Of a stretch of 64,000 nucleotides of DNA, positions 2,147 through 6,540 are shown one piece after another. The position numbers and the translations under genes are program-made. The stretch lies in the IMG/VR virus record IMGVR_UViG_3300037010_001227, positions 62,001 through 126,000 of that record. One strand, written 5' to 3'. The notes beneath the pieces were generated by a model, which made no database searches, was not told where the DNA came from, and was given only the letters and a program-made list of their open reading frames with translations. Positions within the stretch are counted from its first letter, which is position 1, and the number at the start of each line of letters is the position of its first letter.

Positions 2147-2236
2147 AGGCGGAAAACAAGAGGATCGAACTCTCATGCCCTTTCAGGTATCTTGTTTAGT
2201 AAACAAGTGCAACAAACCAGTATTTGCCTGTTTTCC
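2147..2236 (-). tRNA. tRNA-Ser(ACT), class II
   Basis: GGAAAAC/GTTTTCC acceptor, G73, CTTGT-TTACTAA-ACAAG anticodon arm, long V-arm, TTCGATC loop; ends CCT. Confidence 0.85.
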
Positions 2237-3155: not shown

Positions 3156-3229
3156 TGGTGTTTCTGACAGGAATTGAACCCGTATAAACTATTTTAGAGA
3201 TAGCTGCTCTACCGTTGAGCTACAGAAAC
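3156..3229 (-). tRNA. amber suppressor tRNA (CTA anticodon)
   Basis: GTTTCTG/CAGAAAC acceptor, A73, CCA; GCTAT-CTCTAAA-ATAGT anticodon arm; canonical D- and T-arms. Confidence 0.9.
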
Positions 3230-4743: not shown

Positions 4744-4830
4744 TGATGCGAGAATTGGGAGTGGAACCCACACATCACAAGGATATCACTTTCTAAGAAT
4801 GAAACGTCGAGCTAGGTCTGCCATTCTCGC
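4744..4830 (-). tRNA. tRNA-Leu(TAG) with aberrant T-loop
   Basis: GCGAGAA/TTCTCGC, A73, TCATT-CTTAGAA-AGTGA, V-arm; T-loop TTCCACT; no CCA. Confidence 0.75.
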
Positions 4831-4832
4831 AT

Positions 4833-4917
4833 GGGTGCTGATTACAGGAATCGAACCTGGTTACTTTCACGCCAGATTTACAGTCTGGTACCAAGTCCAG
4901 TAGAGAGCAGAATCAGC
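4833..4917 (-). tRNA. tRNA-Tyr(GTA)
   Basis: GCTGATT/AATCAGC, A73, CCAGA-CTGTAAA-TCTGG, V-arm, TTCGATT loop; weak D-stem. Confidence 0.85.
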
Positions 4918-4920
4918 AAA

Positions 4921-4948
4921 TAAAAAGGCCCTAAACTAATAGGGCCTA
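4921..4948 (-). terminator. intrinsic terminator immediately 5' of tRNA-Tyr
   Basis: AGGCCCT/AGGGCCT stem followed by a T run on the minus strand. Confidence 0.65.
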
Positions 4949-5982: not shown

Positions 5983-6043
5983 TATTTTAACATATTATCA
6001 CATATGTTGGGGAAGAACCTAACGCTTCAAATGTGAAGGTTAC

Positions 6044-6119
6044 AGGTTGCCCAAAGTAGGATTGAACTACTAACCTCACGATTATCGGTCGTGCGCTCTA
6101 CCAGTTGAGCTATTAGGCA
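6044..6119 (-). tRNA. tRNA-Ile(GAT) with C33
   Basis: CACGA-CCGATAA-TCGTG; TGCCTAA/TTGGGCA acceptor. Confidence 0.85.
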
Positions 6120-6122
6120 ATA

Positions 6123-6197
6123 TGGTGGGCTAGATTAGTATCGTCTAACCTCTCGGGATTTTCAGTCCACGCGCTAATACATCTCAGCTACTAACCC
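6123..6197 (-). tRNA. tRNA-Phe(GAA) with degenerate T-loop
   Basis: GGGTTAG/CTAGCCC, A73, CCA, CTGAAAA loop; weak anticodon stem; T-loop ACGATA. Confidence 0.75.
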
Positions 6198-6227
6198 ATA
6201 AAATAAACCATTATTTGATTTTCAAAC

Positions 6228-6406
6228 AACAAAAAACCCGCTTTTTTTTGGCGGGTTCTTGTGAAAGGAGCAAAGATGAAGCTTTATGAACAAGAACCCG
6301 CTCTAGTATGAATGGAGAAAATTGCTGGGCTAAATTGGGCATAAAAACTACGACCAACGTTGTCGTTAGTTGCAAGTAGTGATGTCTGTCCAACTTGAAA
6401 GTTCAT
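6228..6406 (-). promoter_or_regulatory. leader-peptide transcription attenuator upstream of tRNA-Phe/Ile/Pro
   Basis: 40-aa uORF 6284-6406; 12-bp antiterminator (6290-6301 with 6251-6262) mutually exclusive with terminator (6251-6257 with 6235-6241 plus U run). Confidence 0.65.
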
Positions 6407-6465
6407 ACAATTAATTCCTATTTGTATACTGGTGGATAGGAAGAAAACTTAAGATATTTATTTTT

Positions 6466-6540
6466 TGGTGCGCCCGGAGGATCTCGAAACCTCAACCCTT
6501 TCGTTAAAAGCGAAATGCTCTTCCTTTGAGCTACGGGCAC
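6466..6540 (-). tRNA. tRNA-Lys(TTT)
   Basis: TTTCG-CTTTTAA-CGAAA, A73, CCA; T53/T61 mismatch at the T-stem closing pair. Confidence 0.85.

What the first reader, a model, noticed from the sequence alone, without database searches (positions are those of the whole stretch)
6228..6420. Textbook-geometry attenuator before tRNA-Phe/Ile/Pro
The uORF is MNFQVGQTSLLATNDNVGRSFYAQFSPAIFSIHTRAGSCS*. Codons 36-39 (GCGGGTTCTTGT, 6301-6290) form a perfect 12-bp helix with 6262-6251. That segment is also the 5' arm of a GC-rich terminator (AACCCGC/GCGGGTT plus U run). The helix arm sits two codons before the stop, where a terminating ribosome would mask it. The peptide has 4 Phe, 2 Ile, 1 Pro and 4 Ala, matching downstream tRNAs (suggestive only). 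It also has an ATNDN stretch resembling ssrA-tag N-termini.
Basis: partly seen in the sequence, partly recalled or inferred. Interest (0 to 1): 0.75.

Follow-up and report, generated by a model that had tools for sequence, protein, structure and literature searches.

The report
Ribosome-gated terminator in phage tRNA cluster
Inside the tRNA gene cluster of an uncultured 213-kb phage sits a short translatable reading frame whose last codons can pair with, and so disable, a transcription terminator. This looks like a switch that lets translation speed decide whether the next tRNA genes are transcribed, but it rests on sequence analysis and a single related phage.

Summary
The 40-codon ORF (6406-6284, minus strand), the perfect 12-bp helix (6301-6290 with 6262-6251) and the overlapping intrinsic terminator (6262-6251 with 6241-6229, then a U run) are all there. 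The combination is not chance: of 14 stringent terminators in the 213-kb phage genome, only this one has an upstream decoy arm.

The one diverged relative I could find (L187, about 84% identical) keeps the Shine-Dalgarno block, the ATG, the reading frame, the stop position, both helices and the downstream tRNA-Phe/Ile. The helix loops have diverged.

The ORF's substitutions are spread evenly over codon positions, so the peptide itself is not under selection. Folding with a modelled ribosome gives the same result in both phages:
- Ribosome held before about codon 31: antiterminator forms.
- Ribosome at codon 34 through the stop: terminator forms.

Specificity for Phe/Ile/Pro is not supported. 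Those codons are not enriched, and two of the four Phe codons are not conserved. The ssrA resemblance is spurious, and this phage's "tRNA-Phe" is degenerate.

Best reading (about 0.45): a translation-coupled attenuator, most like mgtL. That is a known mechanism in a new setting. There is no covariation, no expression data and no known host.

The parts
6466..6540 (-). tRNA-Lys(UUU), directly upstream. The leader follows it in both phages.
   Evidence: ARAGORN. Rfam 56.3 bits. A tRNA-Lys also precedes the homologous leader in L120/L187.
6411..6428 (-). 18-nt block identical in both phages. It holds the AGGA Shine-Dalgarno (6419-6416), 9 nt before the ATG (10 nt in the relative).
   Evidence: Alignment. 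GAGG/GGAG/AGGA are 5-7x enriched upstream of this phage's long ORFs, and AGGA spacers of 5-9 nt are usual.
6284..6406 (-). Leader ORF: 40 codons plus a TAA stop (6286-6284).
   Evidence: The relative has a 39-codon ORF with an in-frame 3-nt indel and a stop at the same place. Substitutions fall 5:6:6 over codon positions, against 65% at third positions in real genes, P = 0.012.
6332..6396 (-). Upstream hairpin inside the ORF. AAGUUGG (6396-6390) pairs with CCAAUUU (6338-6332).
   Evidence: -16.4 kcal/mol. Both outer arms are invariant in the relative, while inner predicted helices are partly broken.
6324..6331 (-). Segment 0: AGCCCAGC (codons 26-28, Ser-Pro-Ala). It can pair with segment 1 or with the terminator's 3' arm.
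   Evidence: RNAalifold consensus. The seg0:seg1 hairpin is -5.9 kcal/mol. It lies in a stretch of about 30 nt that differs at one base between the phages.
6290..6301 (-). Segment 1: the antiterminator 5' arm, codons 36-39.
   Evidence: 12/12 complementary to 6262-6251. 11/12 identical in the relative; the one change affects the outermost pair.
6263..6289 (-). Loop of the antiterminator helix, including the last codon and the stop.
   Evidence: The 24 nt from the stop codon to segment 2 (6286-6263) are only 50% identical between the phages, against 83-90% for the flanking arms.
6251..6262 (-). Segment 2: shared arm, serving as the antiterminator 3' arm and the terminator 5' arm.
   Evidence: The single C-to-U change in the relative keeps pairing (G-U) in both helices.
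6224..6241 (-). Segment 3: the terminator 3' arm (6241-6229), running into the U tract.
   Evidence: Terminator hairpin at -13.5 kcal/mol here and -14.9 in the relative. The arm is invariant, while the 9-nt loop 6250-6242 has changed.
6198..6223 (-). Conserved spacer between the terminator and the next tRNA.
   Evidence: The post-terminator spacer 6227-6198 is 90% identical to the relative. No promoter consensus was found in it.
6123..6197 (-). tRNA-Phe(GAA)-like gene. It is degenerate in this phage: a bulged anticodon stem and a non-canonical T loop.
   Evidence: Rfam 31.3 bits against a cut-off of 29. ARAGORN misses it even when relaxed, while the relative has a canonical tRNA-Phe at the same place.
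6045..6119 (-). tRNA-Ile(GAU), the second gene downstream of the terminator.
   Evidence: Present in the relative.

Best explanation
This is most likely a translation-coupled transcription attenuator sitting inside a phage tRNA operon.

Proposed mechanism:
1. RNA polymerase coming from tRNA-Asn/tRNA-Lys transcribes a leader carrying a ribosome-binding site and a 40-codon ORF.
2. The last 16 codons hold two strands (6331-6324 and 6301-6290) that can sequester the two arms of the terminator lying just downstream.
3. If the ribosome keeps pace and reaches about codon 34 through the stop, it covers 6301-6290. Then 6262-6251 pairs with 6241-6229, and transcription stops at the U tract before tRNA-Phe-like and tRNA-Ile.
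4. If the ribosome lags or stalls before about codon 31, the 12-bp antiterminator forms and polymerase reads through.

The sensed signal is most likely general elongation speed or tRNA supply, not one amino acid.

Shown here: the sequence features, their energetics, their rarity in the genome, and their retention in one relative.

Inferred: that the ORF is translated, that the terminator works in the unknown host, and that the ribosome is the trigger.
For: - The helices and their overlap are real and energetically ordered: -23.5 against -13.5 kcal/mol.
- It is the only one of 14 terminators in the genome with a decoy arm.
- An AGGA Shine-Dalgarno sits at a usable spacing in a phage that clearly uses Shine-Dalgarno sites. 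It lies inside an 18-nt block identical in the relative.
- The relative L187 (about 84% identical overall) keeps the ATG, the frame (a 3-nt indel), the stop position, both helices, the terminator and the downstream tRNA-Phe/Ile. The loops have diverged: the stretch from the stop codon to segment 2 is 50% identical.
- Substitutions are uniform over codon positions (P = 0.012 against real genes). No peptide homologue exists among about 15 billion proteins apart from the relative's own. So the frame is kept but the protein is not, as expected for a leader peptide.
- Base-pair probabilities with a modelled ribosome: masked to 6305 or further upstream, antiterminator 0.998; masked to 6293 or further downstream, terminator 1.0. 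The relative gives the same two outcomes.
- 20 of 39 codons are read by the tRNA set encoded downstream, against 31% in genes (P = 0.007) and in the top 4.5% of 488 small ORFs.
- Leaders with interspersed rather than tandem regulatory codons are an established mechanism, as in mgtL (PMC6460261).
Against: - There are only two diverged sequences. All helix arms are essentially invariant, so there is no covariation. The one change in segment 1 breaks the outermost pair.
- At 84% background identity, retention of a 12-bp helix is not in itself significant.
- ORF retention is weak evidence. 26% of simulated neutral substitution sets keep it, and a second frame (6393-6211) is open in both phages too.
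- There is no run of regulatory codons. Phe/Ile/Pro are not enriched, and F3 and F30 are not conserved.
- The naked-RNA default differs between the phages.
- No promoter was identified, the host is unknown, and there are no RNA data. The runs that hold the sequence are DNA, as contigs only.
- The first regulated gene is a degenerate tRNA in this phage.
- Leader-plus-terminator candidates have failed mutational tests before, as with S. coelicolor ilvB (cited in PMC1262725).
Confidence: 0.45

Rival explanations
1. An RNA switch or tuning element that does not depend on the ribosome. The decoy arm could set a fixed, partial efficiency for a leaky internal terminator. Alternatively it could be displaced by a protein, a small RNA or a tRNA, or the long hairpin could serve as a processing or stability signal for the tRNA precursor. 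On this reading the ORF is incidental.
For: - The substitution pattern in the ORF looks non-coding.
- Two forward frames are open in both phages.
- Arms are conserved and loops are variable, which fits any RNA-level function.
- Other terminator hairpins sit directly in front of tRNAs in this cluster (6905-6883 and 4947-4926). Leaky termination and processing therefore seem to be part of how the cluster is expressed.
Against: - It does not explain the conserved Shine-Dalgarno and ATG, the in-frame indel, or the stop placed 3 nt after the decoy arm in both phages.
- No known riboswitch, T-box or other Rfam family matches.
- In this phage the antiterminator wins by 6 kcal/mol. A terminator that nothing can unmask would be pointless, yet it is conserved.
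Confidence: 0.27
2. An ordinary small phage gene encoding a 40-aa protein with its own terminator. The complementarity to the terminator arm is a side effect.
For: - Shine-Dalgarno, ATG, frame and stop are all conserved.
- Small ORFs followed by terminators occur elsewhere in the cluster, for example the 53-aa ORF 5130-4969 with the terminator 4947-4926.
Against: - Substitutions are 35% at third positions against 65% in real genes (P = 0.012). Amino-acid identity (78%) is below nucleotide identity (86%).
- There is no homologue in the protein libraries and no Pfam or PHROG hit.
- A 12-bp perfect decoy would defeat the gene's own terminator.
Confidence: 0.1
3. A functionless relic. A local duplication of the terminator's 3' arm (6302-6292 resembles 6242-6232), or debris of a decayed tRNA gene in a fast-changing tRNA cluster. 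It is retained in the relative only because the two phages are still 84% identical.
For: - A direct repeat, 10 of 11 nt, lies 60 nt apart (D4).
- The cluster is in flux: degenerate tRNAs, an HNH endonuclease insertion and replaced spacers.
- Retention of the helix at this divergence is not statistically significant in itself.
Against: - Neighbouring tRNA spacers (Asn-Lys, Pro-Ala) are unalignable between the phages, whereas this one aligns end to end.
- Within it, divergence is concentrated in loops (50% identity) and spares the arms, the Shine-Dalgarno block and the start.
- The relative's helix energies keep the same order.
Confidence: 0.18

Closest known systems
mgtL / mgtP leaders of Salmonella mgtA and mgtCBR (coupling/uncoupling attenuators; PMC6460261)
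   Same: A short leader ORF whose translation, kept in step with transcription, selects between alternative stem-loops. Any slowing of the ribosome increases readthrough. The regulatory codons are interspersed, not tandem.
   Different: In mgtA the attenuator state is reported to act with Rho (from my own knowledge) and is combined with a Mg2+ riboswitch. Here the terminator is intrinsic, the controlled genes are tRNAs, and the element is in a phage. There is no sequence relationship: the Rfam mgtC_leader match is 15.6 bits against a cut-off of 48.
Classical amino-acid operon leader-peptide attenuators (trpL, pheL, hisL, leuL, thrL, ilvL; Rfam RF00513, RF00512 and relatives)
   Same: A leader ORF with a ribosome-binding site. 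Mutually exclusive antiterminator and terminator hairpins share one arm. Ribosome position decides the outcome. In the relative the naked RNA can also adopt a 1:2 plus 3:4 type fold.
   Different: There is no run of codons for one amino acid. In this phage the untranslated RNA favours readthrough, not super-attenuation. The stop lies after the antiterminator's 5' arm, not before it. Rfam Trp_leader and Leu_leader score 17 bits against cut-offs of 41 and 50.
Attenuators of translation-apparatus genes: pheST in gamma-proteobacteria, trpS and leuS in Streptomyces (PMC1262725)
   Same: Leader-peptide attenuation applied to components of the translation machinery rather than to biosynthetic enzymes. 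This gives a feedback on decoding capacity.
   Different: Those control aminoacyl-tRNA synthetases and carry tandem cognate codons. Here the controlled genes are the tRNAs themselves, and no single amino acid stands out.
T-box riboswitches
   Same: An antiterminator/terminator choice that reports on tRNA status.
   Different: T-boxes bind uncharged tRNA directly and need no leader ORF. No T-box match was found.
Internal termination between the two tRNA subclusters of phage T4 (Goldfarb and Daniel, about 1980; recalled from memory, not found in the searchable library)
   Same: A phage tRNA operon divided by a terminator, so that distal tRNAs depend on readthrough.
   Different: As far as I recall, no leader ORF or decoy arm has been described there.

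Membership tests
Leader-peptide (ribosome-mediated) transcription attenuator | Short ORF with a ribosome-binding site upstream of the regulated genes, on the same transcript | tested here: met
   ATG at 6406, AGGA at 6419-6416 with a 9-nt spacer. Shine-Dalgarno use is shown for this phage. The feature is conserved in L187.
Leader-peptide (ribosome-mediated) transcription attenuator | Intrinsic terminator and a mutually exclusive antiterminator sharing one arm | tested here: met
   -13.5 against -23.5 kcal/mol, with the shared arm at 6262-6251. The relative gives -14.9 against -18.5.
Leader-peptide (ribosome-mediated) transcription attenuator | ORF placed so that ribosome position selects the structure | tested here: met
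   By modelling only. Masked to 6305 or upstream, antiterminator P = 0.998. Masked to 6293 or beyond, terminator P = 1.0. The relative gives the same result.
Leader-peptide (ribosome-mediated) transcription attenuator | Regulatory codons: enrichment or a run of codons for the sensed amino acid | tested here: not met
   Phe/Ile/Pro are 7 of 39, P = 0.2. There are no tandem codons, and F3 and F30 are not conserved. Codons read by the whole downstream tRNA set are moderately enriched (20 of 39, P = 0.007, top 4.5% of small ORFs). This second test was chosen after seeing the data.
Leader-peptide (ribosome-mediated) transcription attenuator | Structure supported by covariation in relatives | tested here: inconclusive
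   Only one diverged homologue exists in every collection searched. The arms are invariant, with one G-U substitution and one broken terminal pair. The only compensatory pair lies in the loop hairpin.
Leader-peptide (ribosome-mediated) transcription attenuator | Termination frequency responds to leader translation | not testable with these tools
   No RNA runs hold the sequence. The DNA runs are contigs only.
Rfam leader families (Trp_leader, Leu_leader, mgtC_leader, rimP) | Score at or above the family's gathering threshold | tested here: not met
   The best of these is 19.5 bits (rimP, cut-off 47). All such matches essentially align only the terminator.
tmRNA / ssrA-like element | tRNA-like domain plus a tag reading frame | tested here: not met
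   ARAGORN finds no tmRNA in the window or the genome. ATNDN is not conserved.
Protein-coding small gene | Excess of synonymous (third-position) change between relatives | tested here: not met
   5:6:6 by codon position, against 104:63:308 in four neighbouring genes. Binomial P = 0.012.

The most novel reading that the evidence does not exclude
The phage measures its own tRNA supply. The leader is built largely from codons decoded by the tRNAs that lie behind the terminator: the conserved run Ser-Phe-Tyr-Ala-Gln-Phe-Ser-Pro-Ala-Ile matches the downstream Ser, Phe, Tyr, Ala, Gln, Pro and Ile tRNAs. A shortage of these tRNAs could arise from a codon-usage mismatch with the host, or from host tRNA depletion or cleavage during infection. 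Such a shortage would stall the leader ribosome and open the terminator. That would be a direct feedback loop from decoding capacity to tRNA gene transcription, which to my knowledge has not been described for any tRNA operon.
Probability: 0.2. Interest if true: 0.85.

Novelty: new variant of a known kind. Interest (0 to 1): 0.6.

Why it matters
Leader-peptide attenuation is known for amino-acid biosynthesis operons, a few aminoacyl-tRNA synthetase genes and some transporter genes. I found no report of it controlling tRNA genes, or of it acting inside a phage tRNA cluster (literature searches).

How phages regulate their tRNA genes is largely unknown, although these tRNAs are now linked to codon-usage adaptation and to escape from tRNA-targeting host defences. 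If the element works as proposed, it would show that a phage can tie tRNA production to how well translation is actually going.

It would also be a compact natural part, about 200 nt, that converts ribosome speed into a transcriptional output.

If it does not work this way, it is still a clear case of a conserved decoy arm set against an internal terminator of a tRNA operon.

Tried and rejected
Searches for further homologues all failed beyond near-identical copies and L187:
- INPHARED phages by blastn: only tRNA-Ile hits.
- UvsX-anchored searches of IMG/VR: none.
- UvsX-anchored search of JGI metagenomes: relatives at 63% identity or less, with no tRNA cluster after UvsX.
- UvsX and SLT homologues in the 5.8-billion-protein set, with contig look-ups. 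P0003, P0004, P0123, P0124, P0129 and P0138 either end before the cluster or lack it.
- Exact and gapped DNA patterns in IMG/VR and GTDB genomes. These gave only the same phage (L008) or chance hits at about the expected number, with no similarity by nhmmer.
- Peptide searches: no candidates, and only L187's own peptide.
- Same-strain contigs (L122, L123, L008) and four DNA runs show no informative variation.

Interpretations rejected:
- tmRNA or ssrA tag.
- A known Rfam family.
- A promoter in the terminator-to-tRNA spacer. A Bacteroidetes-type -7 box in L187 would place the start inside the tRNA, and the phage uses Shine-Dalgarno sites.
- A repeated promoter motif in the conserved Shine-Dalgarno block.
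- TAG recoding by the suppressor tRNA.
- A similar switch at the second ORF-plus-terminator (5130-4926), which has no alternative pairing.

Claims I withdrew:
- My early impression that the ORF is more conserved than coding DNA was wrong. It is 84%, against 81-88% for genes.
- My early claim that untranslated RNA always reads through holds only for this phage, not for L187.

Full report
**Context**

The window is part of a single-contig, 213,189-bp virus genome with 34% G+C. It comes from microbial-mat and sediment metagenomes.

On the minus strand the order is:
- a UvsX-like recombinase (8502-7312)
- a 93-aa ORF
- a terminator hairpin (6905-6883)
- tRNA-Asn (6864-6782)
- tRNA-Lys (6540-6466)
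- the 268-nt spacer under study
- a weak tRNA-Phe(GAA)-like gene (6197-6123)
- tRNA-Ile (6119-6045)
- tRNA-Pro (5982-5908)
- further tRNAs interspersed with small ORFs, down to position 184

The phage has no cultured relative. The best UvsX identity in INPHARED is about 30%, and IMG/VR holds none apart from the phage itself. It belongs to a family of 210-240-kb metagenomic phages.

**The observation**

- The 40-codon ORF is at 6406-6284.
- The 12-nt perfect inverted repeat is 6301-6290 with 6262-6251, with a 27-nt loop.
- The second pairing is 6262-6251 with 6241-6229, followed by a U tract.
- The long hairpin is worth -23.5 kcal/mol and the terminator -13.5. The region folds better than shuffles, with z = -3 to -4.

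It is not chance.
- Perfect inverted repeats of at least 12 bp number 32 in the genome, against 0-4 in random genomes.
- Among 14 stringent terminator hairpins, this is the only one preceded by a copy of its own 3' arm.
- The element occurs once in the genome.

Two further features are relevant.
- An AGGA lies 9 nt before the ATG, in a phage whose long ORFs show 5-7-fold enrichment of Shine-Dalgarno cores.
- A further segment inside the ORF, AGCCCAGC at 6331-6324 (codons 26-28), is complementary to 6301-6295 and to the terminator's 3' arm.

So both strands able to sequester the terminator's arms lie within the last 16 codons of the ORF.

**Comparative evidence**

Near-identical contigs (L122, L123, L008) and four DNA runs gave no informative variation.

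One diverged relative was found through the SLT-domain protein downstream: Logan contig L187, which abuts L120 from the same sample. The two phages are about 84% identical over 20 kb. In the relative an HNH endonuclease gene and a tRNA-His are inserted upstream. Even so, the order tRNA-Lys, leader, tRNA-Phe, tRNA-Ile is kept, and the spacer aligns end to end. The neighbouring Asn-Lys and Pro-Ala spacers do not align at all.

Within the spacer, the following are conserved:
- an 18-nt block with the Shine-Dalgarno site
- the ATG
- both arms of the upstream hairpin
- segment 0
- segment 1 (11 of 12)
- segment 2 (11 of 12, with the change giving G-U)
- segment 3 and the U tract
- the 30 nt leading to the tRNA

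The antiterminator loop and the terminator loop have diverged; the 24 nt from the stop codon to segment 2 are only 50% identical.

The ORF is kept through an in-frame 3-nt indel, and a stop (TAA to TAG) is at the same place. Helix energies keep their order in the relative, -18.5 against -14.9.

**What the ORF is**

Its 17 substitutions fall 5:6:6 over codon positions. Four neighbouring genes give 104:63:308 (P = 0.012). Amino-acid identity (78%) is below nucleotide identity (86%).

No homologue of the peptide exists among about 15 billion predicted proteins, other than the relative's own. It has no Pfam or PHROG match. So the peptide sequence is not what is selected.

Retention of the frame is only weak evidence for translation. 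26% of simulated neutral substitution sets keep the ORF, and the +1 frame (6393-6211) is open in both phages too. The better arguments for translation are the conserved Shine-Dalgarno and ATG, and the fixed position of the stop 3 nt after the decoy arm.

**Mechanism**

I modelled a ribosome as masking everything up to 13-14 nt past its A site.

| Ribosome position | Antiterminator P | Terminator P |
|---|---|---|
| A site at codons 25-30 | 0.998 | 0.001 |
| A site at codon 32 | 0.44 | 0.72 |
| Codon 34 through the stop | 0 | 1.0 |

The relative gives 0.99 for the antiterminator with the ribosome held upstream, and 1.0 for the terminator with the ribosome at the stop.

The naked RNA behaves differently in the two phages. 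Here the antiterminator state wins by 6 kcal/mol. In the relative the two states are isoenergetic, because AUGAAC at the start pairs with GUUCAU at the end of the ORF, and segment 0 pairs with segment 1. The property shared by both phages is therefore the ribosome-dependent choice, not the default state.

This is the logic of a coupling/uncoupling attenuator. A ribosome that keeps up with the polymerase causes termination, and a slow or stalled one allows readthrough.

**What is sensed**

- Those codons are 7 of 39 (P = 0.2), and 28% of spurious small ORFs match or exceed that share.
- None are tandem.
- F3 and F30 are replaced in the relative.
- The tRNA-Phe-like gene is degenerate in this phage though canonical in the relative.

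A broader signal is possible. 20 of 39 codons are read by the set of tRNAs encoded downstream, against 31% in genes (P = 0.007) and in the top 4.5% of 488 small ORFs. The best-conserved ten codons (Ser-Phe-Tyr-Ala-Gln-Phe-Ser-Pro-Ala-Ile) all correspond to downstream tRNAs. I chose this test after seeing the data, so it is only suggestive.

**Rivals**

- A ribosome-independent RNA element is the main rival. It could tune a leaky terminator, act as a processing or stability signal, or be a switch operated by some other factor. It fits the non-coding substitution pattern and the other terminator hairpins placed directly in front of tRNAs (6905-6883 and 4947-4926). It leaves the conserved start signals and stop placement unexplained.
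- An ordinary small gene is disfavoured by the substitution pattern, and because the decoy arm would defeat the gene's own terminator.
- A functionless relic is disfavoured by the contrast between conserved arms and diverged loops, and by the unalignable neighbouring spacers. With only two sequences it cannot be excluded.

**Comparison with known systems**

No Rfam family reaches threshold. The weak matches to rimP, Trp_leader, Leu_leader and mgtC_leader align little more than the terminator.

- In function it is closest to the mgtL type of leader. There, interspersed codons and the degree of transcription-translation coupling decide between stem-loops (PMC6460261).
- It is next closest to classical attenuators, including those of pheST, trpS and leuS, which regulate translation-apparatus genes (PMC1262725). 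That paper also records that a leader-plus-terminator candidate failed a mutational test (S. coelicolor ilvB), which is a reason for caution here.
- Literature searches found no report of leader-peptide attenuation of tRNA genes or within phage tRNA clusters.
- From memory, phage T4's tRNA operon has an internal terminator between its two subclusters. I could not retrieve that paper.

**Verdict**

The most likely reading (about 0.45) is a translation-gated terminator controlling at least tRNA-Phe-like and tRNA-Ile. A conserved look-alike of an extended -10 element at 6002-5994 may give tRNA-Pro and later genes their own start.

This is a known mechanism in a new place: a new variant of a known kind. 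The evidence is computational, rests on one relative, and lacks covariation and expression data. The experiments listed under next steps are simple and would settle it.

Noticed in passing
window 3156-3229 (-): An amber-suppressor tRNA (anticodon CUA; ARAGORN labels it Pyl) is the best-scoring tRNA in the cluster, at 68 bits. It is absent from the relative L187. TAG still ends 37 long ORFs, and reading it as sense gains no more ORF length than doing the same with TGA. So there is no sign of stop-codon recoding.
   Followed up: partly
window 6123-6197, 4837-4910, 4747-4830 (-): Three tRNAs look eroded in this phage: Phe GAA-like, Tyr GUA and Leu UAG. They show mismatched stems and non-canonical T or D loops, score 26-31 bits, and are missed by default ARAGORN. 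Their counterparts in L187 are canonical.
   Followed up: partly
window 2148-2236 (-): This tRNA-Ser has the unusual anticodon ACU. The orthologue in L187 has GCU.
   Followed up: no
window 6883-6905 and 4926-4947 (-): Strong terminator-like hairpins with U runs lie about 10 nt in front of tRNA-Asn and the tRNA-Tyr-like gene. The tRNA cluster is thus cut into blocks by terminators, with no room for promoters after them. Neither has a decoy arm.
   Followed up: partly
window 5983-6044 (-): The tRNA-Ile to tRNA-Pro spacer is 92% identical to the relative, more than the flanking tRNAs. It holds the palindrome ACATAT/ATATGT and TGTGATAAT (6002-5994), a look-alike of an extended -10 element that ends 11 nt before tRNA-Pro and would put a start a few nt upstream of it. 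In L187 about 320 nt are inserted after it.
   Followed up: partly
L120 11768-12304 (opposite strand), between tRNA-Asn and tRNA-His: The relative carries an HNH homing-endonuclease gene (PHROG 2255, E = 2e-38) inside its tRNA cluster, plus a tRNA-His that this phage lacks. tRNA cluster content turns over quickly in this lineage.
   Followed up: partly
window 6211-6393 (-): A second ORF in the +1 frame (60 aa, TTG start) runs through both helices and the U tract. It is open in both phages, with indels in the two loops summing to 3 nt. It has no Shine-Dalgarno site and no codon-position bias.
   Followed up: partly
window 6401-6406 and 6286-6291 (-): The start of the leader ORF (AUGAAC) is complementary to its end (GUUCAU, overlapping the stop codon) in both phages. 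In L187 this pairing helps make a terminator-permissive fold of the untranslated RNA.
   Followed up: partly
L123 3770-3803 (window 6218-6251): A contig of the same phage from another sample differs from the window at only three positions in 3.3 kb. All three are in the terminator loop and U tract, within 35 nt of the contig's end. This is probably a homopolymer or assembly artefact, but the contig does break just after the terminator.
   Followed up: no
window 6149-6199: Short unitigs in the source runs match the 5' half of the tRNA-Phe-like gene, with 3 mismatches in 51 nt, and then diverge upstream. This suggests another phage in the same samples with a similar tRNA but a different or absent leader.
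   Followed up: no
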